This document shows, one piece after another, positions 2,255-45,514 of a stretch of 64,000 bases of DNA. The first letter of the stretch is position 1, and each line of letters begins with the position of its first letter. Under the pieces are notes generated by a model. It did no database searches. It saw only the letters and a program-made list of their open reading frames with translations, and was not told the DNA's origin. The position numbers were made by a program, and so were the translations under genes. Origin of the DNA: Mizuhopecten yessoensis (taxonomy: Eukaryota); NCBI RefSeq assembly GCF_002113885.1, contig NW_018408465.1, positions 3,128,060 to 3,192,059 of the forward strand, given 5' to 3'.

Positions 2255-2320
2255 CACTATAAAATGTACTTCTACAGTGATTAACGTAAGCTGTAATTTG
2301 ATTCAGTGATTGTATTACAT

Positions 2321-18714: not shown

Positions 18715-21105
18715 ATTTTTGTGTTTTTTGGATTTTCCCCATCGTTCTTGTATTCATTGCAAGAAGATTCCCTTAAAAAATTTCCTTTAAACTTGATATT
18801 GCTGAAGATTGCCTAGGTTACCAATGCCCTGTACCTCTTGGTATCTCCCATTGGGTATATATGTATTGCTTAGTTTTAAGATTGCCTAAAAAACCTGTTT
18901 TGGCTCGAGTTTTTAAATAGGTTCTATTGCTTGATATTTCCCGTTTATCTTTTTCTGCTTCAACTTTGGGATTTCTTTATGCAATCGTTTAAGATGACAA
19001 ACTATCTCACAGTACCTACTTTGATATCTGTACATTGAATATATCTGCCCTCTTCCTTGCCACTGCTGTGTTATTTACCCGGAATACTTTTATATTGGAA
19101 CATTGAATCTGTCTGTCCACTTCCTTATTGCTTAGTTTTAAGATTGCCTTAAAAAACTGTTTTAGCTCGAGTTTTTAAATAGTTTCTATTGCTTGATATC
19201 TCCCGTTTATCTTTTTCTGCTTCAACTTTGGGATTTCTTTATGCAATCGTTTAAGATGACAAACTATCTCACAGTACCTACTTTGATATCTTTACATTGA
19301 ATAAATCTGTCATCTTCCTTGCCACCGCTATGTTATTTACCAGGAATACTTGGATAACGGTACATTGAATATTTCTGTCCCCTTCCTTGCCACCGCTGTT
19401 TTATTTACCAGGAATTCCTTGATATCGGTACATTGACTATGTCTGTCCTCTTCATTGCCAGCGCTTTGTTATTTACCCGGAATACTTTGATCTCGGTCAT
19501 TGAATATATCTGTCCTTGTGTTTTTTGGATTTTCCCCATCGTTCTTGTATTCATTGCAAGAAGATTCCCTTAAAAAATTTCCTTTAAACTTGATATTGCC
19601 GAAGATTGCCTAGGTTACCAATGCCCTGTACCTCTTGGTATCTCCCATTGGGTATATCTGTATTGCTTAGTTTTAAGATTGCCTAAAAAAACTGTTTTAG
19701 CTCGAGTTTTTAAATAGTTTCTATTGCTTGATATTTCCGGTTTATCTTTTTCTGCTTCAACTTTGGGATTTCTTTATGCAATCGTTTAAGATGACAAACT
19801 ATCTCACAGTACATACTTTGATATCTGTACATTGAATATATCTGTCCTGTTCCTTGCCACCGCTATGTTATTTACCAGGAGTAAAGAAATGTTTATGTGA
19901 TGCGTACATGTATAGTAATTTGGTGTCTGTTGTGATTATCTCAACCTCACAAAAGTTGTTCTTTGCGAAGTGCTCGCAATTATGTCTTTCAAAGTTTTTT
20001 GGCTCTATGGTGAAGTTATTTACCAGGAATACTTTTATATTGGAACATTGAATCTGTCTGTCCACTTCCCTGCCACCGCTTTGTTATTTACCCGGAATAC
20101 TTTGATAACGGCACATTGAATATATCTTTCCTCTTCCTTGCCACTGCTGTGTTATTTACCCGGAATACTTTGATATCGGTACATTGAATATGTCTGTCCC
20201 CTTCCTTAAAACCACTGTGTTATTAACCAGGAATACTTTGATAACGGCACATTGAATATATCTGTCCTTGTGTTTTTTGGATTTTCCCCATCGTTCTTGT
20301 ATTCATTGCAAGAAGATTCCCTTAAAAAATTTCCTTTAAACTTGATATTGCTGAAGATTGCCTAGGTTACCAATGCCCTGTACCCCTTGGTATCTCCCAT
20401 TGGGTATATATGTATTGCTTAGTTTTAAGATTGCCTAAAAAACCTGTTTTGGCTCGAGTTTTTAAATAGGTTCTATTGCCTGATATTTCCCGTTTATCTT
20501 TTTCTGCTTCAGCTTTGGGATTTCTTTAGGCAATCATTTAAGACGACAAACTATCTCACAGTACCTACTTTGATATCTTTACATTGAATAAATCTGTCCT
20601 TTCCCTTGCCACCGCTGTTTTATTTACCAGGAATTCTTTGATATCGGTACTTTGAATATGTCTGTCCACTTCCTTGCCACCTCTTTGTTATTTACCCGGA
20701 ATACTTTGATCTCGGTCATTGAATATATCTGCCCTCTTCCTTGCCACTGCTGTGTTATTTACCCGGAATACTTTTATATTGGAACATTGAATATGTCTGT
20801 ACACTTCCTTGCCACCGCTATGTTATTTACCAGGAATTCCTTGATATCGGTACATTGAATGTATCTTTCCTCTTCCTTGCCACTGCTGTGTTATTTACCC
20901 GGAATACTTTGATCTCGGTCATTGAATATATCTGTCCTATTCCTTGCCACCGCCGTGTTATTTACCAGGAGTAAAGAAATGTTTATGTGATGCGTACATG
21001 TATAGTAATTTGGTGTCTGTTGTGATTATCTCAACCTCACAAAAGTTGTTCTTTGCGAAGTGCTCGCCATTATGTCTTTCAAAGTTTTTTGGCTCTATGG
21101 TGAAT
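18715..21105. repeat. Complex tandem duplication: three copies of an about 330-bp block interleaved with about 62-bp repeat units
   Basis: tgtgttttttggattttccccatcgttcttg recurs at about 18720, 19517 and 20269; 62-bp unit cttccttgccaccgctgtgttatttaccaggaatactttgatatcggtacattgaatatatctgt; a second block is duplicated at about 19877 and 20967. Confidence 0.9.
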
Positions 21106-21680
21106 TGGTCCTGTTGTTCTATTAAATTTCCTTTTTAACAGTCTATGCGATTTAAAAAAAATACCTCATTGTTGAATTTGCATGAGATTATCAAACATCC
21201 ATCGAAGCATGGCTTTTGTTACAAAGAAAGTATCGCATATATGGTGATAAATAAAACTATTTCATGGTGTTTTTGGATTGACTTATATCTTGTAAACAAC
21301 TGTTACGTCAGCTTACTAAGTTAATTACAAGTATATTATTTGTCATTTCAGTATTGATAAATCTCCAGTGATGACTTTGAACATCAAACAGATGGTTTTG
21401 TACTAATTCATCATTATATTCATTAATATTTAGGATATTAATTACAAATGGAAGCAGGCATGAATATTTGTCAATTTTTTCTCAAGTGAAAACAATTGGA
21501 ATTTGGGAGCAAAATTTAAGTTCCGTTTTCAGTCTTTCTTGCCTACCGAATTTTAATGTCGCCTATATTTTACCATAAATGCTATTGTTGAATATATATT
21601 GGATTGAATAAAGCTAAGTAATACAATTCTTCATTCTTTATGTTTGTTCCATATACAGTAATCTATGATTTTACAGGGGC

Positions 21681-21896
21681 TTAAAGCTGACAGTGCAAGT
21701 TAAAAAGCTTTCAATTGAGATTAAAAAATAAAAAATTCAAAATATTTTTTTCTGGTTTTGAGATCTTCCCCATCTTTTCCGACTATCGTTTCTAAGGAAG
21801 TGCCGACATTTTAGTTTTATCTTGCTTGATAACGATATTTAAAAAAAAAAAAAAAATCTCGATTGAAAGCTTTTAAACTTCAACTATGAGCTTTAA
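21681..21896. mobile_element. TTAA-flanked MITE with about 40-bp imperfect TIRs (AG...CT termini, Kolobok-like)
   Basis: ttaa-agctgacagtgcaagttaaaaagctttcaattgagatt ... aatctcgattgaaagcttttaaacttcaactatgagct-ttaa. Confidence 0.6.
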
Positions 21897-22986
21897 GTAC
21901 CATTATGAATGAAAGTTTGGATATTTGATGACGTAGATAAATTCTGATGACGTAGTATAAGTCGTGAAGACAATATGTGATGACGTAAAAGCTGACGTAG
22001 ACGTATGACCTGCAGATATAAGGTGTAATAATGTGGAGGTATAACATCTGATGACCGTCAATGTAAGCTTTATGCAACGCAATCTTGTACGGGTTTACAC
22101 CCTAGGGCAGTTGGAAGTACTGTACTTGAAGAATTGATGAGCCAGTAACCACGTTATATAGTTAAAATGATGAAACACGTCCAGTGAACGATAGTCTGAA
22201 TTTGCGATCTAGGAGTATATTTGCACTGTTATATTTCATTTACTAATGGTCGACCCGGGGGTCCTAGACACTACAAAGACATATATGGTTTCAGACATTC
22301 TGGGGTTACTTATGAGTTGAGCCTCAACTTGTATGAGAGGTCTACCTTCAGAATAAATCTTAACAACAAATTGGATTCGTCTTTTCCTTGTTTTGCTTTT
22401 GTCATAGCAGATTTGTCTTATATATATACTTTTGAATGTTTCTTTAAACTATTTTTCTGGGAGTTTCTTTTTCAAATATCGAAACAATAGTTAAAATGGA
22501 GATTTAGAAAGGTTTTGTTCAAATAAAAAGTTCAAATGAAATGCGAGAGATGATACACTTAAAAATGTGCTTCACCTGTGAGTGAATCTCAGCTAGTTCT
22601 AAGTCAGTCATGAATAGTGACTCATATTTCACATTTTCACAATTGAAAAAGTAGCTCTGCATCTTCCACTCTACCACTGTTTTCATGGCAATGACTACTC
22701 CTAGGGGTATTGCACTGTTAACTGTACACACAATTGGATACAACTACCCTTTCTTTCAAAATGTTGAATTCAAAATCAATCCTGCTGTTCTCATCTGAGT
22801 TTTATATGACATACAATGATTTCAAAACATCGAGTAACTTTGTTCTCGACCGTTAGTCCTAATTCAGATGGAAACACAAGCTTGCTTGTACTTTTTTTCA
22901 TTGATGATCTACCCATCTCAAATATCTATCTGTCGCCAAACGTAAGGACCACCTATGATAATTGAAGCTGTTTTTTGTGCTTGCAG

Positions 22987-23435
22987 GATTGTCCAGTACA
23001 TTCCCCACCTACACCAGTGCCCTACACACAGAAGGTCAGCCAGTCACCGGCCAGTTTCCCTCCAGTGTCTTTTCTTCCTATCTCCAAACATCACTGTCTA
23101 ATCTCCCTCAGCCCACGTTTATGGGGCACCCAGCCAATATGCCTCACCAATTCCCCAATACATATCCCAAGGAAACTGGTGGTGATTATTCAAAACCTTT
23201 CCCTAAACTGGGAAAGGACGATCCCGGGAGCAGGGAGCATAAGATTGTCAGAAATACGGGTACTAAGTACAAGACGTGCGTATTCTGTCAGATGAGGGGC
23301 GTGAAGACAAAGTCTGGATGGTACTCCTATACCTACCACAAGTGTGAGGCGTGCGACGTGTCACTATGTAAAGGCAAACGGAACTGCTTTGAAGAGTATC
23401 ACCGAGCCTTTGGGATCAAACTCGACTGGTATTAG
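22987..23435 (+). CDS. Alternative terminal exon E10: Pro/Ser/Thr-rich linker plus piggyBac-type Cys-rich domain
   Basis: Acceptor ttttttgtgcttgcag|GA (phase 1); EHKIVRNTGTKYKTCVFCQMRGVKTKSGWYSYTYHKCEACDVSLCKGKRNCFEEYH; stop TAG. Confidence 0.85.
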
Positions 23436-24911
23436 TCATTTCACACTGAGAAGGGAAAGCATTACTGGTATATCATTCATTTATTAATGCTGATCACCAG
23501 ACTGAAGGCAGTGTTACTACAGATCACATGTCACTGGTTTTCACCGACCATACAAGTCGGCCTGCTGATTATTCCATCATTTTGCTGATCAAACATCGAC
23601 AGGGTTTTGTAGCAATTCCTTGTGTTGCTCATTAAAGAACAGCGTTGCAACAGGGATGTACCATTACTGGTTTAGTTATTGGTGATGTTGTGAAGAGATC
23701 GTATTAAGACTATCGTCCACATTGTGTCTCTTAACTAACACTAGACAAAATGTATTACATTGACCAGAACTAGGAATCAACATTGACCAATTAGTATGTT
23801 ACTTACATCTTACAACATGGTCAAAGTATTCGGGTGATATGACAGAGAAATGATGCAAGGCTTACCCTAACATGTGTTATAAATGTATCTCCGATGTCAA
23901 TTTAAACCACGAGAAAACAAGGATTATAAACCACGAGAATACATTGGTGATATGAATATAAATATTGAGAATACCTTGATGTATCATACATGAGTGTGTT
24001 AGACATGGGAGTTGTGACGAACACCTTTGTGTGGGTGATTTGTATACGTGTTGACTAATTTCTTGCCTCTGTGTGACAAGTTAAACGTGACAAACATTAA
24101 AATATATGAGTGCAATATTTACATCAGGTATTAAAATTTGAATTGTGATTACCTCTGTGAAAATGTACATTGACTTTCTGTAATTTGGACACAGTGTGCT
24201 TCAACGGGTCAGTTCCAAATGACCAAATGTTCTAGACGTAGCCTGCTAATGTCAGTCAGTTTAGTTTAGTACTTGCGTACCAATACCAATATCAGGCGAT
24301 ACACTACACCTGAATGCACTGTGTAACAGGTTCTGTATATATATATTAGTTGTCAATAAAAAAAAACATCACTGTAGTTCCGTTTTATCTTGTATTTAGA
24401 AAGGAAAGACGAGTATTTTAAATGTACAATATTGATTTTAAGATATGTTGAGCTTTTTTCAGAATAAGGATTAAAACCCGCGTAGTAAAGATGCTTACTA
24501 TGAACACATCAGGTTGTGTAACATTAAAAAAAATGTATAATGAATGTCAAACACCACATCCAATGTAGCTGAAACAATTTCCAAAGTCGAATAGGTTTGA
24601 TATAAAATGTTCTTGTGTATTGCACATTATAGAACACATTTGTGGGAATGCCAGGTGTAAATTTTCTGTTAATGAAACCACTATTTACAAAAAACATCTG
24701 TAATGACATCGTATCGGTGCCTCCAGAGGCCACAAGATGTGATGTTAGTACCCGCAATTTATATATACCAAGACCATATCTCATACACAGCAAAGTTAAA
24801 ATAAAAAAAATTGTCATGTTTGTATAGAATTGTGAGGCCATTTTTTATACCGCAACCTCTTTGGGGGAGAGTCACATGATCTGTTTTATTGATCTTATCA
24901 CATTTGATAGA

Positions 24912-25132
24912 GGCCACGGTGGCCGAGTGGTTAAGGTGTCTGTCCCTCTACAATCACTAGCCCTCCACTACTGGGTCGCAGGCTCGAGGCATACATAGGG
25001 CAGTCGCCAGGAAATGGTCGCTGACCGATGGTTTGTCTCCAGGTACTCTGGTTTTCCTCCGCACAAAAACTAGCTCGTCCTTAAATGACCATAGCTGTTT
25101 ATAGGACGCAAAACATAAGTAAACAAAACAAC
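24912..25132 (+). mobile_element. tRNA-derived SINE (V-domain-like body)
   Basis: Pol III box A ggtggccgagtggttaagg, degenerate box B ggctcgagg, body ggtttgtctccaggtactctggttttcctcc, 3' tail gtccttaaatgaccatagctgtt..ataggacg followed by an aaac-rich end. Confidence 0.7.
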
Positions 25133-25642
25133 ATTTGAAGGGTGTTGTACAATCACAGAACCTTTATAGGAAGTGTTTTGCTAAACAATGTGTTTTTTTA
25201 AAGGGCATTTTAAGTCTGATTAGATCATGTCTCCTTATTGTATTGTGCTTAAGATTGTTGTCGATAATGATATTGAATTCCTTCAATCTGTTTCTTTCCG
25301 TTAACCGTCTTTCTGTCTCCCTTTTTTTTCATATGTCAAAGCTACCAGGTAACCAATTTACAGCTAGTGTAGGTCCATTTTGAAACGGATGTAAACAATG
25401 TATAGTTATTCACACATTAACAGTTTATATTTTTCAAGATTGCATATGGAACAAAAAAAAGGGTTGCATTTTTCTACGAGAATGGTCATCTTAACATGTG
25501 TAAACATACAGCGCTTATCCTAAAAATGGACCCTCCGAGGTCACTTTTCCCGTCATCATAACTGCTGTATTAGTTAGTATTGTTTGACATATTTATGTGT
25601 AGCCTTATGGACTCTAATTACCATCTCGCTTTGTCCTTTCAG

Positions 25643-26049
25643 GCCCAGGTCGGGCTGATCCGCACCGCGATTTTGGCGCTCTGGGTATTGGCAGCGATCC
25701 AATGGGGATCGTACTCACGGGCAGTCTGATGTCTCCTCAAATAGGCGACGTATCGTCCGCACACCACAGTCTCTACCTTGCTGACCAGAAGGACAGTTTA
25801 CTTATGTACCACAGGCCAGTGACGGCGAAGGGATACAAGAAACCATGTTTGTTCTGTCAGATCAACAACGTCAAGACCAAGTCGGGATGGTACACCTACA
25901 CCTACTATAAGTGTGAAGCTTGTGATATCCCGCTCTGTCAACCTCAGGGCAAACGAGATTGTTTCGTGCGCTACCATGAATACTTGGCTGCCGGTCAGAG
26001 CAAATCTGAACCTGATGCGACTCATAAGCATTCGTCCGGATATCTGTGA
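25643..26049 (+). CDS. Alternative terminal exon E11: piggyBac-type Cys-rich domain
   Basis: Acceptor ctcgctttgtcctttcag|GC (phase 1), with ctctaat branch-like motif upstream; YHRPVTAKGYKKPCLFCQINNVKTKSGWYTYTYYKCEACDIPLCQPQGKRDCFVRYH; stop TGA. Confidence 0.85.
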
Positions 26050-26636
26050 CTGAAAAGCAGCAATACAGATTGGAGTGTTTAACGACTACACACAGTCTGA
26101 TCTGACCTGTATATGAATCCTTGCCGAGGCTACAAAGCCTTCATGGAGGTTGTGTTTGTCTAGGGATCACTTAATGTGACACTGCATGTCTTTATATCAC
26201 CAGTAATGTAATTATGTTCTTCGAGCAATAATCCCAATGGCTAGTCTTGAGAATGTGGTAAAATATGTACCTTTATTGAATTATACTAGTTGGGGTATTG
26301 TTTGTCATTGATCTACATACCTAGCGAGTGGAAGGTTCCGACACACGTAGTGACTTTATTTAAATGAAACCATGTCTTTTTTTGTAATGGTTAATAAGGA
26401 TTATATTTGAATTTTGCAGAAGGAACTTTTATACAAGTAGAAAAATATGTCTTAAGGTAAAGGGAACCGTACGATTTAAATGTAATATTACTGATGACAC
26501 TGTTATGAAATATTTGCCTCTTATTTTTCTGCTTTTCATTGTACAGATTGCAGTTATTCTAAAATTTGTTAATGTTTTTTTTGGAAAAAAAATGATTGAT
26601 AAACAAAAGAAATAGGGGAACATGCCATGAGTCAGA

Positions 26637-26727
26637 ATAACTCATTCACCCCTGAAGACACATTTGAACTCTTCCACTTCAAAGGTTGGAATAGTTCATT
26701 ATGAAATTTTGGGGGTGAATGAGTTAA
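26637..26727. mobile_element. MITE family A copy
   Basis: ataa-ctcattcacccctgaa...gggggtgaatgag-ttaa; homologous to 2321-2411. Confidence 0.75.
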
Positions 26728-28786
26728 AATATGTGCTGCCTCACTCCGTATTTCTGGTAATTGTTTTTTTCTTGGCATATCCACTACCAATCCCACATAT
26801 TACAAATGTTGCTGCAATCAACAGTTTGTAATTTCACTGTTTCAATATGAAATATGCTTACATTGCAAAGGGAAGTAACTCTTGCTTTATCTGGAACTCT
26901 TCTTTGCAATTAGAAGTGCTGAGGTGGTACCCTTAACCTTAGACACATGTTTCACCTATCTGTATATACCAGTTTGAGGGAGTTGGTCAAAGCAAAACAA
27001 AAATGAGCACAATTTTAACGAGATGTTCAGCGACAGGAAGTACAGATCTGATTATTGTATGTTGTTTATTAGAATCATTTGATTGAGGGTCGACTATGAC
27101 AGCAGATAGAATTTGCACAGAGTACGATGTGTTATAGAATGTGATCGAAAAAAGTTCTTCATCGCAGACATTTTCTGTTGTTTTGGAATTCCTTCAAACT
27201 ACTGGTGACATTTCCTGATACGTAGTTTTGGATGGGTTTTACCATTTACCATTTACCAAATGATTATCGGATAGACTATATATATCAGTGGCACACAGTT
27301 GGTATTTGAAGACCGTATATATATATTATAGTTTAGTTAAATATATATAGCATTTAGCTTTTTCAACATATTTATTTGTTGGGATCTATTGTCATCTGTC
27401 AACAAACGGCAAATCAAAGTATCACAGAATCCAAGCATTTATGACCATATAAGGTTGTTGACGTCCAGATTGACCAAGTATGTGAGTGTGTATTGTATGA
27501 CGATTATCATGTTGAATCCCAGGACACGTTTGTCCCGTTACCTGTTGTAATCACTATGTAAATATCACCAATTTAAAATATACCTTCAGATGTCATTGAA
27601 TGATTAAGTGGTATACTATTAGATACAACCACATCATACTGAGGCTATTTTAGCGGACCTTACTTGAAGAGCTAAATTTGCTTTGGTTATGAGAATGAGT
27701 CCATCGTCCGTCATCAATTTTTCTGTAGAATGCTTTAATTTAGTCCAGAATAGCTGGTCGGTATTACCTAAATCTAGTAAAGAGCATCCATTGGTGAAAA
27801 TGGATTCAATGTTAAATAAAAGGTAGGCTGTGACTTTCGCTTGTGACACGTGGGCAGAGGGGCGGGGTCGAATATTGGAAATAGTTTCAGTAAGCGATAA
27901 TTAATCAGACTTGGTGCCATACATTAAGGGCTGATTTGAGAGAGCTGCTGTGGTGTCTTATTTTCACTTCTCCATTTCCACAATGGTGACTTTACAAAAA
28001 TAATAGTTGTAAAGAGTGCCTTTCTGCTGATAAAGTGTTTTTTTCGGTCATTCAAAATTAAACATGAATACCTGCTCTCTGATTGGTTTAGAAATTTCAG
28101 CGTTTCAATTTCTAACTGTTGAATGAAAACCGGAATTGATAGGAATTACATTCCTGAGCAGGTGATGTTAATAACAGTATTAATTGGAAATCTGAAGATG
28201 GCCACCTTGTCTTAAAATAGGAGAAATAAAGCCTTTTCTTGTCTAATTCAGATAGAAACATGTTAGCAAATACTATGCCATAGACGTTTTGTTAACGGTA
28301 ATTGACGATGCTTTAGATAACAGTTTTATTCTTTATAGAAAATTATAATGATGTTTCCGAAGATACCTGTCTACATGTTATTACTCTCCCGGTTGTATAT
28401 ATTCATGAGTTTAATGTCAAAGATGTTTCTTGCTATTTTTTGTCACAAATGTACGCACATACTTATTGTAACAAATTTCATATAACATGATTCTTTTTAT
28501 ATCTAATTGCCATAGACACGTTTCACTGTTATAGTAGTGTTGTAAAATTGTTCATTCAAATATGTAACATTTAATTTTTCTTATGACCAAAAAAAGGAAT
28601 TTTCTGCCCAAATTTATCGGTGGTTTATCTTTCTGAATGTGTCACTGATGACTTTATGATTTTGTAGAGTTGAAAGTTTTACATATTATATGACACCAAA
28701 TTGGAGATTATATACATGCTTAATATGAAATATATATATGACACTAGACAGGTTACCAAAGCTATGTTTCACTTAGTAAACATGTT

Positions 28787-28877
28787 TTAACTTGCTCACC
28801 CCTGAAATTTCATAATGAACTATTCCAACCTATGAATTGGAAGAGCTTAAATGTGTCTTCGAGGGTGAATGAGTTAA
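28787..28877. mobile_element. MITE family A copy (inverted orientation)
   Basis: ttaa-cttgctcacccctgaaatttc...cttcgagggtgaatgag-ttaa; internal sequence is the reverse complement of the other two copies. Confidence 0.75.
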
Positions 28878-29675
28878 AAAGGAACATATTTTTTTTCAGG
28901 GACTTTTAAGGCATTAAGTATGTTTTAAGCGAAACCAATGTGTCTTGTACCTGATGATCTTTTTTATGAAATCTAAGTCATTGTTCCTGATGAAGATTCA
29001 AGTGAAATTCATTTCTCTTGTTTAATTAATTTTAATTGAAATTAAAATTGTTTTGCCAATTGAAAGTTTAATTGAAGTCAAAGTCTTTAGTGTCCTATAA
29101 CTTTGCATCTTTTCAAAGTCATTTACATGCCATCTTTTCAAGGATCAACATTGTTTCCTGGAAGGGGGTTCTGTTGTGCTGTGTTGCAAAATCTTACAGT
29201 TTTTAAGATCGTAAGAAGGACCCATGTTTTGATGAAATTCCATGGTTTAAGCTGTTCTATGCAATGAATGAATTTAACTTGGATTTTGATGAGGGGGACG
29301 TTGGAAGTTTCTATTCATTTGAAATTGATTTCTGTTTACAAAACCTTGTCATATATATCACTCGTGTTCCTACATGTGCAAACATTAAATGTGTTGTGAT
29401 TGTAATAAACTGTAGCTAGAGATAAACAAGGTGTTATGTGTTTTGTTTGCACATTAAGCGTGGTGGACCGGGAGGGACGCTTTAGGCTGAGGACAGCAGC
29501 CTGATTTTGAACATACAGTGTATTATAAGTTATACACGTAATCAGAAGTGCTTGTATGAAGAACCATGATTATCATTCTCATTACTGGTTATCACATTGG
29601 GTTGGAACTGATCATACACGTTTTAGTAGAAATTAAACTTTTGACCAGCAGTGTAAATCTAGCAGACGATACAGT

Positions 29676-29865
29676 TATTCCGTCTTTGCGTATTGCAGAG
29701 TTATCTTCTCTTGGGAGCAGGTATTGATTGTTACGTCACTTGTTTGTGAGAGAAACGTCATCAATTTTTGAGAAAACGACGTAATTTTCTCACACAGACC
29801 AATGACTTAACAATCAATACCTGCTCCCAAGAGAAGATAACTCTGCAATACGCAAAGACGGAATA
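29676..29865. mobile_element. Palindromic (hairpin) MITE, about 190 bp
   Basis: tattccgtctttgcgtattgcagagttatcttctcttgggagcaggtattgattgtta is exactly reverse-complemented at the right end (about 58 bp), with further imperfect pairing inside; TA at both termini. Confidence 0.85.
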
Positions 29866-30144
29866 GTAGGCAGAACACACAACCTAACATGCCGTCACCA
29901 GGTTATATACTTTGGACATCCTTGTACACGCATACAAACATACATTGTCTGTTTGCTTGACATGACGGCTTTTCTCTTGTCTGAATTTATCCTTTATTCG
30001 GTCGAGAATCCGAGTTTAAATCTGAAAATCATTAGCATATGTTAAGTTTTAAATAATATATTTTGCTCCGAATATCGGCAAAACAAAATAACACCATTGC
30101 TAATACGCAGTATTTGACAATTCAACTTCTGTTTTGGTTTTCAG

Positions 30145-30491
30145 GCAAGAATGCCCGCGGTCTGGAGCAGGTTGTTGAACAGTTGCGGGACAGACAGGGA
30201 CAGGTTCAAGGCTTACATCTGAGTTATGTCCCCGGAAGTTCCGTACAACACACCGCCCTGCCCTTAAAGCACGACGAATTTGATACAAAAATCCACCGGC
30301 CGGTAACCACCGCAGGATATAGAAAGCCATGTGTGTATTGTCAAATCAACAAAGTGAAGACCAAGTCTGGCTGGTATACCTACACCTACTTTAAATGTGA
30401 GGCATGTGACATCCCACTGTGTAAAGGCAAGAGAGACTGTTTCACTCAGTACCACAACTACCTAGAATGGGGCGGACACGATATCAAGTAA
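30145..30491 (+). CDS. Alternative terminal exon E12: piggyBac-type Cys-rich domain (close paralogue of E11)
   Basis: Acceptor cttctgttttggttttcag|GC (phase 1); IHRPVTTAGYRKPCVYCQINKVKTKSGWYTYTYFKCEACDIPLCKGKRDCFTQYH; no Met in the ORF; stop TAA. Confidence 0.85.
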
Positions 30492-32780
30492 CTTCACAAG
30501 TATGCTGCGAACATCCCGCCATTATTTTATCTTGAATGTTTGGATGGGGCGGCAATCCCACTGACCTCTCATGTTTGGATGGGGCAGCAATCCTAGTGGC
30601 CATACAAGTGTCGATGTGGCCGCACCCCAGTGACTTGACAAATGCTTATCGGAGGACATGCCGACACCACGTGACAACATTGGTATATCTATTGCAGCAG
30701 CATGTCACCAAGTGCCCTAACAAGTGCCTGAGCTGTTGGGTGGAAAATTATTTTTTGTTTTGCAAAAACAACACGGGGTATTTGAATGGATACTTGCAAT
30801 GTTCACAATACCGAAAAAGACCAGTTTCAAAACATAGATACGTGTATGAAGCTTTTATTCTTGTTGACGAAGATAGAGAGAACACTATTGAAAGTATGAA
30901 ATAAAACTGCAGTTTGGTTTAGAAAACAGCTTCAATATGTATTATAGTAGGAAGTGTGATTGAAAATAAGGACACTTGAACATACCACTAGGAAACCGAA
31001 AGTAGCATTTGCTCCTGATTTTCAGTATTCACTATTAACAATGTTGATGTTACAGTGTGTTTCATTGAAATAGAGTGTTGTTGGAATTTGAGTCCTGGTC
31101 GGAACAGAACACAGCCGTTTCTGTGCTGTATTACAGGACATATGTATAGGTTGTGTTATATTAAACGATGAAGCAGGAATGGTTTAGTTAGCAGTTGCAT
31201 TATAATCCGTTATTTTGATGACGCTAATGAATTGAATTACAAAGTTCCTATTGGAACATACGGCACTAATTAGTGCCATCGTGTAGAAATAAATATACCA
31301 GCACAAAAAGTACACAAGACGTTAGACATCAACACGACCATTAGACATGCTAGGAGACATTAGCACAAAGGGAAAGGCATCACAGACTCTACAAAAAGGA
31401 AAAAGAAGGTGAATACAGATAAAGTGGAAGGTTTAAATCTGAAGTGCACTGCATGCGGCACCCGTCATGATATCCATTGTCACCATTTGTGGTACCCATC
31501 ATGATGTTTCCTGTCACCACATTTGCCAACCGTCATGATGTCTCCCGTCATCACATATGGTATGGTCATGATGTCTCATGTCACATGTCACGGTCTCATG
31601 TCACATGTGACAACCCTCACGATGTCTCGTGGCAACCGTTGTGTATGATTTATTTCTTGCCAGGAGGATAAGTTTCCAGTCTATAGAAAAAAAGATTTTT
31701 AATTAAAAAAATGGATGAATTTCCACAAAACAGTTGCCGTCTTTGATAGGTATAACAAATAAAATAGTCCCTCGTTGTGAATGTATGATAGATAAATCTC
31801 AACCTGAGTTGGGGGTTGGGTTGGGAATGGGCTGGTGTTTGTGCATGTAGAGACACAACCTATTGCTAATATGTTCACTGACGATGTTTACCAACAGTTG
31901 TACCTTGTTTCTTCTCTGATTCGTGTATGTTCTCCCAATCAACCCTGAATATGTCGTCATATGTATTGTTTCCAATTATTATTTTCATTATTAAATTCTA
32001 TTGTGCTATGAAGTTATGTCAATGTGATGGCCATTATGACACATACCTGCATCAGATTTTTACCATGAAGGGTGCGGCTAGCTGATCATTTCCAGCTGTA
32101 ACAAGAGATAGGCTTGTGAGGAGTGTGAAAAGCTGATGTGTTTAGTGTGTAGATATGTTTCTTTAGACTTCAATCTATCCTGAACTGTTTGATGGGTCTG
32201 TTATTGTAAAATTTATTAATAATTTTCCGGAATTTGGGTTGAAGACAATCGTTCTGGGCCTGTGTGGACTGATATAACCCGAACTGCTTAAGGTCATGCA
32301 ATACCAAAGGTTAGAAAACACTTAATCGTTAGGTGTATGTAAGAGACGCATCATGTAATGCAATATAACAGTTGTGGAATGGCATACACTACATTCAGGA
32401 CATGGACCAAACATCTTGACACTGCATGGAATGTCGTACCATTTACCTCGTATAAACAGTGATAATTCCAAATCTGCTGGGGGATTACACCATTTGGTTT
32501 TTAACATTATACTGTCTGTCTGACAACGTTCTGTTAGATCAGGCCAAAGTCTGATATATATACATCACCACCCGGGTGTAAAGTGAGAAGATTCTGGAGC
32601 AAAAGCCACTGTGATGCGCGTCACTATTATGAAGCCATCATTTAGTTTGATTTACAGTACATACAGAAACAATCGGTGTATAATAGAGTGTATCTATATT
32701 TTGACCCAATGCTTATCGTAGTGACTTCTGTTCTGTTAGTATTGTGTACCCTAATGGTGTATGGTTTATTATGCTTGCAG

Positions 32781-33124
32781 GGTCGCACAGTCAAACAAAC
32801 GAAAGATCACGATATGGTACGGTCCGTCAAGGTGCCTACCCCCTCTCTGGTATTGATCATGGGATGGTTCAGCACTTACCAATCGTGATGGATGGACCGG
32901 GTGCGTACAAGAAGCCTTGCGTTTGGTGCGAGGTAACGAAGGCGCGGACCAAGTCCGGGTGGTACATCTACTCACGGTATAAGTGTAGCCAATGTGACGT
33001 ATCACTCTGTACCGGAAGTCGGGGCTGTTTCACCGCCTATCATAACAGCTACCTGGGCATGCAGCATGCTAGCCCCCACCATCCAAACCAACCCGCACCA
33101 ACAAACCAAGGACAGACCAAATGA
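32781..33124 (+). CDS. Alternative terminal exon E13: piggyBac-type Cys-rich domain
   Basis: Acceptor tttattatgcttgcag|GG (phase 1); QHLPIVMDGPGAYKKPCVWCEVTKARTKSGWYIYSRYKCSQCDVSLCTGSRGCFTAYH; stop TGA. Confidence 0.85.
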
Positions 33125-39258: not shown

Positions 39259-40031
39259 TATTACATTGAGCAGGGTTAGATTGCAATATAACCATAAGCT
39301 TTATCGGGACGGTCCATATGTTTTCTGTATGATCAATTCTTTGGTAAACATTTTTTGGGGGAAAGTCGTAGAAAAATAGTTGCATTTCAACAAATTATCA
39401 TCATTTCAACAAATTATCATTATTCCAACTGGGGCTGAGGTGTTACAAGGACCATTTATATAAGTCAGGAAAACAAATATTTTCAATGGCTAAGAGAATG
39501 ACCATTTAAGCGAAAAACTAACACGTTTGCATTTAACACATTCAGACATCGTGAGTGTATTGTACTACTATTTCATTATGTATTAAAATACAACGAATAA
39601 ACTGCTACAATTATACTTTCTTAGACATGTTAAAGTGGTATTTTAATGCTTTAAACACTGCTTTATAAGGTTTACAATGAATACTAGTTTAGTTTGTTAA
39701 ATGATGGTTAAACGTGGTAAATGTGAACACAGTTGTTTTTTCTGGGTTTTGACATGAACAGTCTCACTTAGTATTCAGTATCAAAGGGTCCAAGACAAAC
39801 TCGAGTTCTATGGATTGGTGTTTTCTATGTCTTTATTACAGCTTGTAAGTGTAAGGTATTATTAGACGGAAATGCATGTTTGTCTAGTGTTCTAGTAGTT
39901 TACCAAGTTCATTGTCTGTTTTTCAGTGTATAAAAAGAACTATTATTTACAGCTAATAATACACCAGTTTCAGTGTTTCTCATTTTATCTTGACGTTTGA
40001 ACTTAAAAAGTGTCATCTACGTGTTTTACAG

Positions 40032-40252
40032 TTGGCGGCATTTGGTACTTTGACGAGGCTAACCAAGGTAACTACCCGTGTCTGATGTGCCGGAAACGTT
40101 TTGCAACACCACAGCGCCTGCGCCAACATAGCCGACTGCACATGGAGCCAGCTTACAGCTGCTCTTTCTGTTGTAGGAGGTTCACGTGGAAACACTCATT
40201 CGACCGGCACATGAGGACGGTGCACAGTATCAGGTGTGTTCACAAGGGATAA
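40032..40252 (+). CDS. Alternative terminal exon E14: two C2H2 zinc fingers
   Basis: Acceptor gtgttttacag|TT (phase 1); YPCLMCRKRFATPQRLRQHSRLH-MEPAYSCSFCCRRFTWKHSFDRHMRTVH; no ATG before the first finger (in-frame stop at 40004); stop TAA. Confidence 0.8.
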
Positions 40253-41124
40253 GTTGTCTCCCCTCTACATTGAGATATTACTGGATTACTTCCCTTGTTT
40301 GATTTTTTTGTGTGTTTCTTGCGTTTGATTGAATTCCAAACGAGTCTGTTCTAAGGGATGTCCCAACATCGGGAAATGTCAATTGAAAATATATTATGAT
40401 TGATTAAACGACTACATCTGGATGATACGATGATGCAGTTTTGTTATGATGGCTTTTTGAAATAAGCATAAACAAAAAAAAATCAAAAAAATCTACTGAA
40501 AATATATGTACAGAATTACAAGTAGTAGTTATAAATATTGCAGTTTAACATTGGGCAGCATTTTGATTAAAGGAGACAGACAATCTGGTGATTCTTTATT
40601 TGAAACGTGAGTTTAAAAGATTGTGTTATGCATTGTAGGCAACTTTTCTTTGAGACTGATTTAATTTTTCACTGTTTGATAGGTTTCCGTTTTGGTATAA
40701 ATGTTCTGAGCATTTTATTCGCCGTTCTAAGTAATTTATCGAGCTGACGTTGTCGTAAAGTTAGTACAAAAAAGTTGGTATACTTACACTGTATATGACC
40801 AATAGGATAGATAGATAGCTTTGCTGACCTATTTGCATTCAGAATGCCAGTTGATAGTTGATTGCTCTGATACCCCTTATTGACTACGGTCCTTTGTATG
40901 TAATATTAGAGACATCGTTAACACGTTTTGTGTACCCAAAAAACTTGGGTAAAAAAGGTTTTCCTCCTGTTGTTTATTACTGACTTTAATTGACTTAACT
41001 AGAGGTCACTGCCACTCAGTTCTGCCTTATTAATATATCTTCAGATAACAAGTTGTTTTTCCATTGTAAATTAAACAATGTTTGCAAGATACTAGAAGGA
41101 CATTCAAAAAGGTTGTTAGTATTT

Positions 41125-41985
41125 TTTATAAGCCCGTCATTCGACGGGTCGTATTATGGTATGGGCGGTGTTTACTGATGTCTGTGTGACCAGATGTCCG
41201 TCCGTTAACTTTTCCTTGTCATCGCTCTCCTGCCTTTATGAACATATCTTGAGAAATCTTGGTGCACACATTGCATACGAATATAACTCGAACGAGTTGG
41301 CACTTCAGATGTTTACACACATTTTTTGGTGGAGTTATGCCCCTTTTATTGCCAAATAAGGGCATTGTGTAGTTAATGCACTAACTTTTTTTTAATCAAT
41401 TCCTTCACCATTTTGTACGGTAATGCTAGAAGAAATAATATTCAACACTTAAATTATGTGTTTTTTTGGCGAGTTTCAACTTTCCGTGTTTTGGCATATC
41501 ACACTTGACAAAGCAACACTGTTCATCGTTTTTGCCGTTAACTTTTGCTCGTTTACACGATAACTCAAACAATTGTTCTCTGATTTTTGTTAAACTACTT
41601 GGTTGTTTCATCACCTGAATGCATTGAATGAGTTCTTAAATCGTGAAATTCAAACGTTATTCGGCAGAGTTATGCCCCATATTCATTGCCAAATAAGGGC
41701 ATTCCGTCGAAAATGCAAGAACTTTTTGAGTATTTGTTCAAGACTCCTACCTCAAAGCCAAGGTTCTGGTTTTAGTAATAGTAACATTGACCGCAAAAGT
41801 GTAATTCTGAAACTCAAAAACAGCTTGCGCCATAAACAAAGTAAATGCATGGCAAGATCACAGTCACCAACAAGACGGTGGCAGTAAGCACATTAAATCA
41901 TATATCACTCAACCTGATCCAATTCATCAGTACCCTTCCGAGGGTCTGACAGGTGTATCATACTTCCGCTCACTGTGGTCTTGTT
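41125..41985 (+). mobile_element. Degenerate HINE-like element (second family)
   Basis: tttatagcccgtc..gacgggtcgtattatgg head hairpin, tgtccgtccgttaac, duplicated gagttatgcccc..attgccaaataagggcatt units, ends in ..tcttgtt. Confidence 0.45.
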
Positions 41986-42983
41986 CGTCACATGTTTTGT
42001 ATTTAGGATTGTAACAACAGGCCTTAAAGTTCAACCTTGAAGCTACTTATATACACAGTACCTTGAAGCTACTTATATACACAGTACCTTGAAGCATCAC
42101 CAGAAAGGTCCCAGGTTTGATACTTAAATGCTTTCATGGAAGTGTGGGTGTATTAAATAGGACGCAAGCTCATTTCGTATAAAAGTGCTCATGATCAGTA
42201 TAGTTTCAACTTTGCAGTTGAGAGGTTTTGTAATCAGTTTCTCAATGAGATGTTGGAATGGTATTTTATGTTGTTGAAATATCTCGTACATTTTAATGAA
42301 ATGTAGTTCATAGTTTGTGGTTATGGGAGGCACGTCACAGTATTTCATTTCTTGTTGAAAATATCAGCCGTTGGATCAGGTTTTTAAGTGAAGTACGTTT
42401 GATGTAACCGGTAATATGTAACGTTATTGTGATAATGGGATTTCCTATGGTGTGAACACTATAGACAGAGCACTTTGTCATGCTTCTGACTCTACTCTGA
42501 TGTCTTCTCCTGGATTTTATAGATATCTATATTCATTGTACATTGGAACTAGACTGTACAGCGGTACATTCAGGTGTACATGTGTATTGCCATCATTTGT
42601 TAAAATCAAAATGCTGCATCGTAAACTCTCATGTAATCCAGGTAAACATACGTACTATCCATTTCAATTTTTGTTGCATTTTCAATTTTTGATAATAAAT
42701 GGCACCCCAGACTATTACTGTAGGTTGATCGTTGTCAATGTTGATTGTAGAGGAGTATTTGAACTCCATCACTTTCTTTGAACGTACAAAAACCGGAAAT
42801 CAAATTTGACTGAAAACGCTTTATATTTAAATCAAAAACACACATTCATAGTACGCTTTTCACTCTTGTGTGCATGACATATACCGAAACCTTGCTACTA
42901 AATGATCGCCTTCCTCTGAAAATATGCTCTTAAGAATAATCTGAAATGTTTTATTAAATATATACTTATGTTTTAAATTGCAG

Positions 42984-43195
42984 AAATACGTCGCCAGTTG
43001 TTGAAGACGCACCAGATCCAATGCCCGGTATGTAAGAAGGTTTTTAACCGGACGTATATCCGCCAGCACCTGACGAAGCACGGGGAAGCAACGCACTCCT
43101 GTCCAATGTGTGGTCGTGTGTTTGTGTGGAAGAGCTCCTTCGACCGCCACAAGCGTACGTGCCAGTACAAGAAAGTCTACATGACTTTTAACTAG
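42984..43195 (+). CDS. Alternative terminal exon E15: C2H2 plus C2HC zinc fingers (last cassette seen)
   Basis: Acceptor tgttttaaattgcag|AA (phase 1); IQCPVCKKVFNRTYIRQHLTKH-GEATHSCPMCGRVFVWKSSFDRHKRTC; in-frame stop at 42974 upstream and no ATG before the fingers; stop TAG. Confidence 0.8.
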
Positions 43196-43894
43196 ACTGG
43201 ACTACAACAATTTACGTCAGTATGTTGTAAACATGGTGAATCAACAGAAACTGTGTCCATCACTATGCATCAACATCTACTCTAAATATACCTTATTCAT
43301 CAGCAGCCATACATTCTGCATCACCTGTACTGGAACATTTCATAATAATGCTGATTATTGAACAATGAACACATATACTTGCTTTAGTCAGAATGTATTT
43401 TCTTTCCCCTACATGAGTGGAAATTCTTTTTGAAACATCGCACGTACCTTTTGATAGGTGATGGATCTGGTAAGCAAAACACTTACGATTAGTTTTGTGC
43501 ATTTTCGAATGTTCTGTATTTTAAGGAATACTACCATAAGCTTACCTGTAGAGTCAAAAGAGTTCCCATAAATTGGAACATCTGTTCTAAACTTAGACTA
43601 TACTGTACATTGTATAGCCAGCCCGATTCACCATGTTATCTCCCTAGTACAAGGGGCAAACTGAACCTCCTTTTACTATCATTAGCCTACTGTCATTCGT
43701 TTCTTTAATTCACCAATCAATTATGCAAGTACTCCTGTCTCTTGGTACTTTTCAATTTGAATACATTATGGTCGATTAAGTAGTGCTTGACGTTTTTGAA
43801 AAAAAAAGATCTTGTCAAATTTATTATCAATCATAGTCCAATTTAGCAAACAAATATTTTTTCCTCTTGTCCCCGCCGTAATGATGATGAATTA

Positions 43895-44236
43895 GTAATT
43901 TGAGGTTCTTATATAACGCTTTATCACAACCTAGTTCCTAGGTCGTCTCAAAGCGGTTCGCAAATTATTATCCATGGTTATAGGGCCTTTGCAACCAGCC
44001 AATATCTTTCTCAACTTCCTGGGGAGCATACAGCCGGTGCTGCCATTTCGGCGCTAACAGCTATCATTCTAGAATTCTAGCACTGCTCAACCACGTACTC
44101 ATTTACAGCTGAGTAGACTGGAACAAGCAGAGTAAAGTATCTTGCTCAAAGATACAACACAGTGCTGTGCCGTGACTCGAACCCGCCACCCTTCGGTCAC
44201 GAGCCCGGCGCCCTACCACTAGACTACCGAGTCTCC
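43895..44236 (-). mobile_element. tRNA-derived SINE (CORE-like), full length
   Basis: Minus strand reads ggagactcggtagtctagtggtagggcgcc...gggttcgagtcacgg (boxes A and B), then ttgagcaagatacttt...ctcagctgtaaatgagtac; second copy at 57255-57530. Confidence 0.75.
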
Positions 44237-44703
44237 ATAGATAGTAGATAAGGTGTGTCATACAGGTCTATTTGATCTTATGTTCTCAACATTCAGCTTA
44301 CATTAGGTATGCCATACAGAGTAAATGTGTGTCTCCTGGTCTGGCCATACAAGGTATAGTATCTTCTCCTTGAAAGTGTACAGACTTATTCTATCTCTCT
44401 TTATCACCCTCTTTATCGCCCTCTTTATCTCTTTATGTACCATGTTGTTTGTACAGACCCTTTATGCCTCTCCCTCTTGCCATACCTGATAGATAATGTA
44501 AGCCTTACCATCAGGCCTTGTTCTCGAAACTATAAGCATGTAAGATAGGTGGTTATACAGGCCCGTCAATTTCCTTGTTCTCGTCAAGCATTGCATATCA
44601 GGTGTGCGATCAAGGCACACCGCAGATATTTAGAGTTTGTGTTTACCGACTGTACGTTTACCGACTGTACTGTCATTGTACAAGATCTTAGTGTCTGCGA
44701 TGC

Positions 44704-44797
44704 TTAACCCTTTCACCACTGTGGACCACAATAGACTCATCCAGATAAATGTATGTGGTAGAGTCTACTAAAGTTACCTAGGGATGAAAGGGTTTAA
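44704..44797. mobile_element. About 90-bp MITE family B (TTAA-CCC...GGG-TTAA, piggyBac-type ends)
   Basis: ttaa-ccctttcacc...ggatgaaaggg-t-ttaa; paralogue at 45424-45514. Confidence 0.7.
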
Positions 44798-45423
44798 AGT
44801 CTTTGCCACTACGTCATATAGCTTTATTCAATCTAAACACCTGGTTCCGCCTTTGGTTTTGCTTAAAGATTTTGAGTATTTCCTTTCTGTTAGATATCTC
44901 CGTCAGTTCCGGTTTTTCAATAACATTGAGTTTGGATTATTCCTGTATATTGATGAAATGTTTTTCATATAAGACTGCGAAAACAGCCGCAGTGGCTGTA
45001 TGACAGTTATAACTTAATGTTAATTAAACTTGTGGTCTGTATCGTCCCAGTGCTGTCCTTGTGTGCATCCTTTGTCGATCTAACAATATCGGAATTCACT
45101 ATTGATCCTACGACACACACCTAGTGTCCACCCCTCTCTGGCCAACTATGTGACCAGTGTCCACTGTCCTCACACACAGGATACCACACTAGAATGTATC
45201 ACAATAGTGGACACCAACAGTGAGGGCATTGGCCCAGGTGACATTGAGTCATTATCTAATTAGAGAGATCTAGAAGGATGTTCATGTGTCACCTCCTCAA
45301 CATTAGGTCTAATTAGGACACTGTGGGGGTGCAACCTACTTCTTTTAAATGGGACACACTATTTATATATAAGTACAGGATGTTCGGATTGTAAGTGGCA
45401 AGTATTTTACCAGCTTATTCCTA

Positions 45424-45514
45424 TTAACCCTTTCACCACTGTAGACCATAATGGCCTCATCCAGTTCAATGCATGGTAGAGTCTACTAAAGTTACATAGG
45501 GGTGCAAGGGTTAA
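45424..45514. mobile_element. MITE family B copy
   Basis: ttaa-ccctttcaccac...ggggtgcaaggg-ttaa. Confidence 0.7.

What the first reader, a model, noticed from the sequence alone, without database searches (positions are those of the whole stretch)
40032..43195. Domain-class switch at the array end: two C2H2-pair cassettes use the same phase-1 acceptor
After 13 Cys-rich cassettes, E14 and E15 encode paired classical fingers sharing F.WK.SFDRH.RT in finger 2. E15 has an 11-residue C-to-H spacing in finger 1 and a C2HC second finger, reminiscent of the paired atypical fingers in lola variable exons. Inference: the constant region accepts unrelated DNA-binding modules. No further cassette was recognised between 43.2 and 64 kb, so this is probably the 3' end of the locus.
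Basis: partly seen in the sequence, partly recalled or inferred. Interest (0 to 1): 0.75.

Follow-up and report, generated by a model that had tools for sequence, protein, structure and literature searches.

The report
Scallop BTB gene's last two exons
The last two alternative end-exons of a many-isoform scallop BTB transcription-factor gene encode pairs of ordinary C2H2 zinc fingers instead of the transposon-derived fingers of their neighbours, and the first is spliced onto the second, so the second is read in two frames.

Summary
Window 40032-40252 (E14) and 42984-43195 (E15) are open frames behind AG acceptors in phase 1. Each encodes two C2H2-type fingers, and they are paralogues (23/47 identical).

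They belong to the gene that public records call Mizuhopecten yessoensis LOC110459972. Its BTB constant exons lie 36-38 kb upstream of the window and end in a phase-1 donor. RefSeq isoform X35 is constant + E15. The model OWF43301.1 and Pecten maximus isoform X33 are constant + E14.

New here:
- RNA reads and contigs from three of the four runs laid show E14 spliced from an internal donor (40233) to the E15 acceptor. That isoform ends in 16 residues read from E15 out of the finger frame.
- All 7 scallop-to-scallop replacements in that tail are silent in the finger frame, so E15's fingers are themselves under selection.
- The class switch is not confined to the end. The array (about 36 cassettes) starts with two weakly BEN-like and four multi-C2H2 cassettes.
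- Nothing cassette-like follows for 60 kb.

The BTB lacks the FxLRWN motif, so this is a lola/mod(mdg4)-like design, not a family member. No constant-to-E14/E15 junction read was shown to me.

The parts
1..33124 (+). Window part of the cassette array: 13 alternative 3' exons with piggyBac-type Cys-rich fingers (context for E14/E15)
   Evidence: RefSeq isoform tails map to acceptors at -7, 2055, 3158, 5331, 6979, 8966, 13249, 17819, 22987, 25643 and 32781.
40030..40031 (+). E14 acceptor AG (phase 1)
   Evidence: The tail of P0129 starts at 40032. The X14 contig aligns from 40030, with 27 further letters that do not lie on the stretch.
40032..40233 (+). E14 as used in RNA: codes GGIWYF...HSI(R), with two C2H2 fingers (40079-40141, 40160-40225)
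40234..42983 (+). Intron removed between E14 and E15 (GT..AG, 2750 nt). It holds E14's own in-frame stop (40250-40252) and ATTAAA at 40403 and 40566.
   Evidence: Joint 40230->42981 'cut +3': 3 reads in X19, one contig in X14 and one in X4. for ATTAAA.
42982..42983 (+). E15 acceptor AG, used by the constant donor (phase 1) and by the E14 donor (phase 2)
42984..43195 (+). E15 finger frame: (E)IRRQ...MTFN, stop 43193-43195. Finger 1 lies at 43022-43081 (11-residue spacing) and finger 2 at 43100-43162 (C2HC).
   Evidence: P0134 (isoform X35) tail maps here. Finger-frame constraint.
42984..43035 (+). E15 read in the other frame after E14: 16 residues, stop TAA 43033-43035
   Evidence: P0129 and P0170 tails. 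RNA joint.
43196..43937 (+). 3' untranslated part of E15, as far as the contigs reach
   Evidence: Contigs run 42981-43931 (X14) and 42981-43937 (X4). No AATAAA or ATTAAA lies in 43195-44000.
43740..45512 (.). High-copy dispersed repeats just beyond the locus (43740-44330, 44528-44921, 45316-45512)
   Evidence: Summed word depths of 10^3-10^5, with many unlike loose ends.

Best explanation
E14 and E15 are the last two of about 36 alternative 3' cassettes of one scallop gene, named Mizuhopecten yessoensis LOC110459972 in public records.

The gene's 577-residue constant part carries an N-terminal BTB pairing domain. It ends in a phase-1 donor about 76 kb upstream of E14. Splicing that donor to one cassette acceptor gives a transcription-factor isoform whose DNA-reading tip is set by the cassette.

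Most cassettes carry a piggyBac-derived Cys-rich finger. E14 and E15 each carry two C2H2-type fingers. They arose from each other by local duplication before Mizuhopecten and Pecten split.

E14 has kept or gained an internal donor just behind its second finger. In RNA it is joined to the E15 acceptor. The E14 isoform therefore ends with 16 residues read from E15 in a shifted frame and uses E15's untranslated tail.

Joined directly to the constant donor, E15 is read in its finger frame and gives a second two-finger isoform.

Shown:
- the exons, their phases and the E14-to-E15 joint;
- the annotated constant-to-cassette models in two species;
- the constraint on the E15 finger frame.

Inferred:
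- DNA binding by the finger pairs;
- cis-splicing over 76 kb;
- the abundance of the E15-only isoform.
For: Gene and constant region:
- Constant exons and the phase-1 donor were read in L005.
- The BTB domain is present: PF00651, E about 3e-15 in all 8 isoforms scanned.
- The ten best of 341 hits are 100% identical M. yessoensis isoforms with BTB plus PF13842 or C2H2 tails.

Links from the constant part to E14 and E15:
- P0134 (isoform X35, 647 aa) is constant + E15.
- P0129 is constant + E14 + the shifted E15 tail.
- P0170 (Pecten maximus isoform X33) has the same build, with E14 60/68 identical and the donor at the same residue.
- 31 of 31 mapped tails begin behind AG in phase 1.

RNA:
- The joint 40233|42984 (GT..AG) is seen in 3 of 4 runs: 3 reads with 2 starts in X19, a 1179-nt contig in X14 and a 1256-nt contig in X4.
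- The X14 contig stops matching at 40030, which is the acceptor plus 'AG' (also the last two letters of constant exon C). It has 27 more letters from elsewhere.

The exons cannot stand alone. Neither has an in-frame ATG ahead of its first finger; the first Met lies inside a finger.

Constraint on the E15 finger frame:
- All 7 residue changes between the two species' 16-residue shifted tails fit single base changes that are silent in the finger frame.
- Only 30 of 108 possible replacement changes are silent there, so P is about 1.3e-4.

Paralogy: in the whole genome E15's best non-self match is E14. E14's second-best non-self match is E15.
Against: - No read or contig that shows the constant exon joined to E14 or E15 was displayed. 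That link therefore rests on gene models (RefSeq Gnomon, and the genome project's own model) plus the indirect X14 contig.
- One X4 contig keeps 100 nt of genomic sequence upstream of the E14 acceptor (39932-40031) although the E14-E15 intron is out.
- An E15-only isoform is annotated in M. yessoensis only. None of the 33 P. maximus isoforms and none of the 28 Ylistrum balloti isoforms that I saw (of 30) has it. Y. balloti shows no E14 type either.
- Expression is low, at 1-3x depth in the raw reads of X19. In the poly(A) run X24, E14 has depth 0 and E15 0.8-1.8.
- The codon argument uses parsimony on protein sequences. Changes silent in the shifted frame are invisible to it.
- The AlphaFold2 single-sequence model of E15 is weak (mean pLDDT 67.7). 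Finger 1 comes out as beta-beta-alpha but finger 2 does not.
Confidence: 0.8

Rival explanations
1. E14 plus E15 are one two-exon terminal cassette. E15's finger frame is a relic of a duplicated cassette that now serves only as E14's last exon and untranslated tail. RefSeq isoform X35 would then be a minor or spurious model.
For: - The only joint shown at the E15 acceptor comes from E14.
- P. maximus has the E14-to-E15 isoform but no E15-only isoform among its 33.
- E15 finger 1 has a shortened spacing and finger 2 is C2HC.
- Finger 2 did not fold in the single-sequence model.
Against: - The 69-codon finger frame is open, with all eight zinc ligands present.
- It passes the Pfam cut-off.
- 7 of 7 inferred substitutions against P. 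maximus are silent in that frame while changing the frame that E14 reads.
- Gnomon built isoform X35.
- X24 covers E15 but not E14, though on few reads.
Confidence: 0.15
2. E14/E15 are transcribed from a start of their own inside the 33-40 kb interval. Either they form a separate gene, or they form a precursor that is trans-spliced to the constant exons as in Drosophila mod(mdg4) and lola.
For: - The X4 contig begins 100 nt upstream of the E14 acceptor and already lacks the E14-E15 intron.
- The constant donor is about 76 kb away.
- Trans-splicing is how the fly loci work (PMC11426971, passages read; abstracts of PMC13490949 and PMC6237743 in the listing).
Against: - There is no in-frame ATG before the fingers, so a separate protein-coding gene is unlikely.
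- All cassettes lie on the same strand and in order, so cis-splicing is enough.
- The other three runs have no depth at 39800-39996.
- A partly spliced pre-mRNA explains the contig equally well.
Confidence: 0.1
3. The two frames are unexpressed chance or decayed zinc-finger relics, and the models are annotation artefacts.
For: Read depth is low.
Against: - Spliced RNA is seen in 3 of the 4 runs laid.
- The E14 orthologue is 88% identical and is built into a P. maximus isoform.
- Pfam and PDB matches support real fingers.
Confidence: 0.02

Closest known systems
Drosophila longitudinals lacking (lola)
   Same: An N-terminal BTB constant region is joined to one of many alternative 3' exons. Most of those exons encode a pair of C2H2-type fingers: 17 of 20 isoforms (PMC11426971, passage read).
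   Different: - lola has a TTK-type BTB with the FxLRWN motif, found only in arthropods. The scallop constant region lacks the motif.
- lola isoforms are partly made by trans-splicing.
- In the scallop the two-finger cassettes are 2 of about 36, and the rest are other domain classes.
- Similarity of the fingers themselves to lola's was not tested.
Drosophila mod(mdg4)
   Same: It has 30 or more isoforms from a common BTB part plus alternative 3' exons that carry a finger of transposon-related ancestry (FLYWCH) (abstracts).
   Different: - All mod(mdg4) mRNAs arise by trans-splicing from separate promoters (abstract of PMC13490949).
- Its BTB is TTK-type.
- Its variable domain is FLYWCH, not the piggyBac CRD or C2H2.
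- In the scallop all cassettes lie on one strand downstream of the donor.
The public annotation of this very gene (RefSeq LOC110459972 isoforms X1-X36; GenBank OWF43301.1) and its orthologue in Pecten maximus (LOC117336857)
   Same: Isoform X35 is constant + E15. OWF43301.1 and P. maximus isoform X33 are constant + E14 + the shifted E15 tail.
   Different: These are automatic models under misleading names ('ZBTB32-like', 'Ring canal kelch-like'). Five paper searches and a sixth found no paper that describes the locus.
Shared exon read in two frames depending on the upstream exon (the CDKN2A p16/ARF arrangement; recalled, not looked up here)
   Same: One acceptor receives two different upstream exons in different phases. 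The downstream exon is therefore translated in two frames.
   Different: Here the second reading is only 16 codons and appears unconstrained (9/16 identical between two scallops, against 60/68 for E14).

Membership tests
C2H2 zinc finger (Pfam PF00096 / PF13894) | Profile score above the curated cut-off | tested here: met
   E14 scores 31.8 bits on PF13894 (cut-off 27). E15 scores 27.8 bits on PF00096 (cut-off 25.2).
C2H2 zinc finger (Pfam PF00096 / PF13894) | Ligand spacing C-x2-4-C-x12-H-x3-5-H in every finger | tested here: not met
   Met by both E14 fingers. E15 finger 1 has x11. E15 finger 2 ends in Cys (C2HC) (gap in the alignment). E15 is therefore a variant pair.
C2H2 zinc finger (Pfam PF00096 / PF13894) | Beta-beta-alpha fold | tested here: inconclusive
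   The single-sequence AlphaFold2 model of E15 has mean pLDDT 67.7. Finger 1 is beta-beta-alpha and finger 2 is not.
Tramtrack-group BTB multi-isoform loci (lola, mod(mdg4)) | BTB constant part joined to alternative 3' exons with different DNA-binding tips | tested here: met
Tramtrack-group BTB multi-isoform loci (lola, mod(mdg4)) | FxLRWN motif in the N-terminal strand of the BTB domain (definition from PMC11426971) | tested here: not met
   There is no F.LRWN in the 577-residue constant region. The paper also reports that it found no TTK motif in Mollusca.
Tramtrack-group BTB multi-isoform loci (lola, mod(mdg4)) | Isoforms made by trans-splicing of separately transcribed 3' exons | not testable with these tools
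   The only hint is one contig that keeps 100 nt upstream of the E14 acceptor. Testing needs 5'-end data or haplotype phasing.
Gene LOC110459972 (same transcription unit as the CRD cassettes) | An mRNA or protein model joins the constant exons to the exon in frame | tested here: met
   P0134 for E15. P0129 and the orthologue P0170 for E14.
Gene LOC110459972 (same transcription unit as the CRD cassettes) | Junction reads from constant exon C to 40032 or 42984 | tested here: inconclusive
   The X14 contig ends its match at 40030 with 27 unplaced letters.

The most novel reading that the evidence does not exclude
E15 is a truly dual-use exon. It is a free-standing two-finger cassette when it takes the constant donor. 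It is also the terminal exon, read in another frame, of its own duplicate E14.

Neighbouring cassettes of such an array can thus be 'stacked' by an internal donor. The partly spliced X4 RNA might further mean that distal cassettes are transcribed on their own and trans-spliced. That would make the scallop locus a second, independent invention of the mod(mdg4) mechanism outside arthropods.
Probability: 0.12. Interest if true: 0.8.

Novelty: new variant of a known kind. Interest (0 to 1): 0.5.

Why it matters
Flies make dozens of transcription factors from one gene by joining a BTB front end to alternative DNA-reading tips. That design has been tied to the arthropod-only TTK type of BTB domain (PMC11426971).

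This scallop gene does the same with a non-TTK BTB. E14/E15 show that one donor serves at least three or four unrelated tip classes:
- the piggyBac Cys-rich finger;
- multi-C2H2 arrays;
- C2H2 pairs;
- weakly BEN-like tails.

That points to convergent evolution. It also shows how a cassette array grows, by local duplication, and how it rewires, because a duplicate became its neighbour's last exon.

The gene offers a natural set of isoforms with defined tips for DNA-binding assays. The gene models are already in RefSeq, so the value lies in the interpretation rather than in a new gene.

Tried and rejected
1. I searched all protein-cluster representatives with E15. There were 17045 hits at E<=0.001. 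The best 150 are all long multi-finger proteins (477-5807 aa, 6-43 matched stretches), because scores add up over fingers. Nothing could be learned about orthologues.

2. I ran the search for homologous proteins on the tail of P0129, residues 578-661. It gave 2 hits among 14 candidates, both other isoforms of the same gene. Isoforms sit inside 90% clusters whose representative has another tail, so orthologous tails are hidden.

3. I ran the search for homologous proteins with E15 alone. No candidate shared three words. Given the length limits, this says nothing.

5. AlphaFold2 on E15 without an alignment gave a weak model. I made no fold search on it.

6. I rejected the reading of E14 as a terminal exon ending at its own stop.
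- Raw reads have depth 0 at 40391-40587 in X19 and X24.
- The depth in 40194-40390 of X14 and X4 equals what the spliced contig alone gives.
- An isolated contig piece at 40391-40587 in X14 (depth 18.8) stays unexplained.

7. BEN identity of the first two cassettes: Pfam BEN reaches only E 0.012 (below the cut-off) for one and finds nothing for the other. I call them 'BEN-like, weak'.

8. RefSeq isoform X34 was not seen. It is one of the 4 unlisted members among the 19 in its cluster. By elimination of lengths it should be the E14 isoform. That is inference only.

9. I opened no supplementary files. They may hold isoform tables for the oyster BTB paper PMC12111275.

The only joined sequences used are database proteins.
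Full report
**What is in the sequence.**
- E14 sits behind tttacAG at 40030-31 and is open from 40032 to the stop at 40250-52. E15 sits behind attgcAG at 42982-83 and is open from 42984 to the stop at 43193-95. Both frames need one base from an upstream exon, so both are phase 1.
- E14 has two fingers with classical spacing.
- E15 has a first finger with 11 instead of 12 residues between Cys and His, and a second finger of C2HC type.
- Pfam places both above the C2H2 cut-offs. Solved tandem C2H2 proteins are the best PDB matches, at E 3.8e-14 and 5.1e-18.
- The two exons are paralogues: 23/47 identical, E 2e-12.
- In the whole 988-Mb assembly E15's best non-self match is E14. E14's non-self matches are a poly-finger frame on another contig (40.5 bits) and then E15 (38.8 bits). 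There is no close third copy.
- Neither exon has an in-frame ATG before its first finger, so neither can code for a two-finger protein on its own.

**Which gene.**
- The window is G000:C5138:3128060-3192059. I fetched 60 kb upstream.
- About 36-38 kb upstream of the window lie three constant exons:
  - an ATG exon;
  - a 447-codon exon beginning inside a BTB domain;
  - a third exon ending ...GGAK with the donor AAAAG|GTAGGT in phase 1.
- A search with the large exon gave 341 hits. The ten best are 100% identical proteins that the sources name Mizuhopecten yessoensis LOC110459972, isoforms X5-X21 and others, with Pfam BTB plus either PF13842 or C2H2.
- Cluster listings added more isoforms, up to X36.
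- Mapping the tails of 31 M. yessoensis proteins back to the DNA gave 31 distinct acceptors. All lie behind AG and all are in phase 1. They run from 30.3 kb upstream of the window to 42984.
- The last two are E14 (P0129, GenBank OWF43301.1) and E15 (P0134, RefSeq isoform X35). The junction codons are G+TT = Val and G+AA = Glu, as the phases predict.

**The array as a whole.** My motif scan and the mapped tails give, in order:
- two multi-exon cassettes with weakly BEN-like tails (Pfam BEN E 0.012 for one, nothing for the other);
- four cassettes with four or five C2H2 fingers;
- 28 cassettes of the piggyBac Cys-rich type, of which 15 lie upstream and 13 in the window (PF13842 above its cut-off in 4 of the 6 ORFs tested);
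- then E14 and E15.

That makes about 36, which matches the 36 RefSeq isoforms. The 'class switch' is therefore real but occurs at both ends of the array.

An earlier follow-up of this scan on the Cys-rich part (s1-528034) reached the same whole-locus reading. I rebuilt it here from my own calls.

**RNA.** I laid two raw-read RNA runs and two contig runs on 39800-45700.
- Depth over E14 and E15 is low, at 1-3x in X19.
- One clean joint appears. The tool reports 40230 to 42981, GT..AG with the cut 3 further right, which means 40233|42984.
- It has 3 reads with 2 starts in X19. One 1179-nt contig in X14 covers 40030-40230 plus 42981-43931. One 1256-nt contig in X4 covers 39932-40230 plus 42981-43937. 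The poly(A) run X24 shows none.
- So E14 has an internal donor right after its second finger and is spliced to the E15 acceptor. Its own stop at 40250 lies in the removed intron.
- This is exactly the model OWF43301.1. After ...HSIR it continues with 16 residues read from E15 one base out of the finger frame, to the stop TAA at 43033-35.
- The Pecten maximus orthologue LOC117336857 isoform X33 (P0170) has the same build, with the donor at the same residue.
- I saw no sign that E14's own stop and tail are used. Depth is 0 at 40391-40587 in the raw reads. The depth of the bin 40194-40390 in X14 and X4 is just what the spliced contig gives.

**Is the link to the constant exons shown?** Not by a displayed read.
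- The X14 contig stops matching at 40030 and has 27 further letters that lie nowhere on the stretch. The two extra matched letters, AG, are also the last two letters of constant exon C. This fits a junction with that exon but does not prove it.
- Against a simple picture, the X4 contig keeps 100 nt upstream of the acceptor. That is either a partly spliced pre-mRNA or a transcript started nearby.
- The link therefore rests on three gene models from two species and two annotation pipelines, on the phases, and on the lack of a usable ATG.

**Is E15 a cassette in its own right?**
- Only M. yessoensis has an annotated E15-only isoform. None of the 33 P. maximus isoforms has one. The 28 of 30 Y. balloti isoforms that I saw have neither type.
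- A comparison of the two shifted tails is telling. They differ at 7 of 16 residues, while E14 is 60/68 identical and the constant part 530/574.
- Each of the 7 replacements is explained by one base change. With those changes the finger frame reads the same 16 residues in both species, including the first Cys-x2-Cys.
- Only 30 of the 108 possible single-base replacement changes in this stretch are silent in the finger frame. Seven of seven therefore has P about 1.3e-4.
- Selection thus keeps the finger frame and ignores the frame that the E14 isoform reads.
- Caveat: this is parsimony from protein sequences. Changes silent in the shifted frame cannot be seen, and I had no P. maximus DNA.

**End of the locus.**
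- From 43.2 kb to 40 kb beyond the window there is no frame with the Cys-rich or paired C2H2 pattern.
- The contigs of E15 run to 43931-43937. High-copy repeats begin there, with word depths of 10^3-10^5.
- Further on lie satellites at 48379-50100, 57706-59231 and 60368-63831, and a weak reverse-transcriptase finger remnant.
- No AATAAA or ATTAAA lies within 800 nt of the E15 stop, so the poly(A) site is unknown.

**How it most likely works.**
- The BTB domain pairs the proteins, and the chosen last exon supplies the DNA-reading tip.
- With two fingers, E14 and E15 should each read a short site. This follows from the established behaviour of C2H2 pairs and was not tested.
- By the recalled numbering of helix positions -1, 2, 3 and 6, the second fingers carry W, H, S, R in E14 and W, S, S, R in E15. 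They differ at one of the four positions, while the first fingers differ.
- Cassette choice is a competition among about 36 acceptors for one donor.
- E14 differs from its neighbours in borrowing the next cassette as its terminal exon.

**Comparison with what is known.**
- The design is that of lola and mod(mdg4). Passages of PMC11426971 report 17 of 20 lola isoforms with C2H2 tips and at least 30 mod(mdg4) isoforms, mostly FLYWCH. They also report that the TTK-type BTB is defined by FxLRWN and was not found outside arthropods, Mollusca included.
- The scallop constant region has no FxLRWN. It works like those loci without being a member of their family.
- Six paper searches found no description of such a locus in molluscs. 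I read passages of PMC12111275 (oyster BTB clusters) and PMC10027918 (transposon-derived factors). Neither mentions it.
- The library lacks most subscription journals, and I opened no supplements.

**Verdict.**
- The gene models are already public, so this is not a new gene.
- The new points are the interpretation, the E14-to-E15 stacking with two reading frames, and the evidence that E15's fingers are kept by selection.
Exons were searched singly, and joined forms were taken only from database proteins.

Noticed in passing
L004:5758-9869 (20-24 kb upstream of the window): Four alternative cassettes with four or five classical C2H2 fingers each, used by RefSeq isoforms X9-X12 of the same gene. 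The array therefore opens as well as closes with C2H2 tips.
   Followed up: partly
L004:572-949 and L004:4228-4893, with acceptors 30.3 and 27.0 kb upstream of the window: Two multi-exon cassettes (isoforms X6 and X2). Their tails resemble a BEN domain only weakly: Pfam BEN gives E 0.012 for one and nothing for the other. Some isoforms of the paralogous genes carry a precomputed BEN hit.
   Followed up: partly
Same contig C5138, about 2.80-2.84 Mb (minus strand) and 2.98-3.06 Mb (plus strand): Runs of short C2H2 frames lie on the same contig as two further multi-isoform BTB genes named. These are LOC110459976, with at least 49 isoforms, mostly C2H2, and LOC110459952, with PF13842 tails. I did not map which gene lies where. 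Scallops appear to keep a cluster of three such loci, also annotated in Pecten, Ylistrum and Argopecten.
   Followed up: no
window 39932-40031: One RNA contig (run X4) keeps 100 nt of intron upstream of the E14 acceptor although the downstream intron is spliced out. A TATAAAAAG lies at about 39930. This could be a partly spliced pre-mRNA or an internal start.
   Followed up: partly
window 40222: A G>A difference appears in 4 of 6 reads of X19 and in both contigs. It is the third base of a Val codon in E14, so it is a silent polymorphism and usable for haplotype phasing.
   Followed up: no
window 41179-41375 and 41640-41710: Two copies of a short dispersed element lie inside the E14-E15 intron. 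The first is covered at 200-600x summed word depth in the contig runs, so it is a repeat transcribed elsewhere.
   Followed up: no
window 48379-50100, 57706-59231, 60368-62102, 62102-63831: Four satellite arrays (periods 328, 38, 36/320 and 61) fill much of the DNA downstream of the locus. The long 'ORFs' at 60-62 kb on the minus strand are these repeats.
   Followed up: partly
L003:718-3636 (16-19 kb upstream of the window): The first four Cys-rich cassettes form a divergent subgroup (C.YCDLVGNKY.CG...) that does not reach PF13842 in the isoform scanned (P0006).
   Followed up: no
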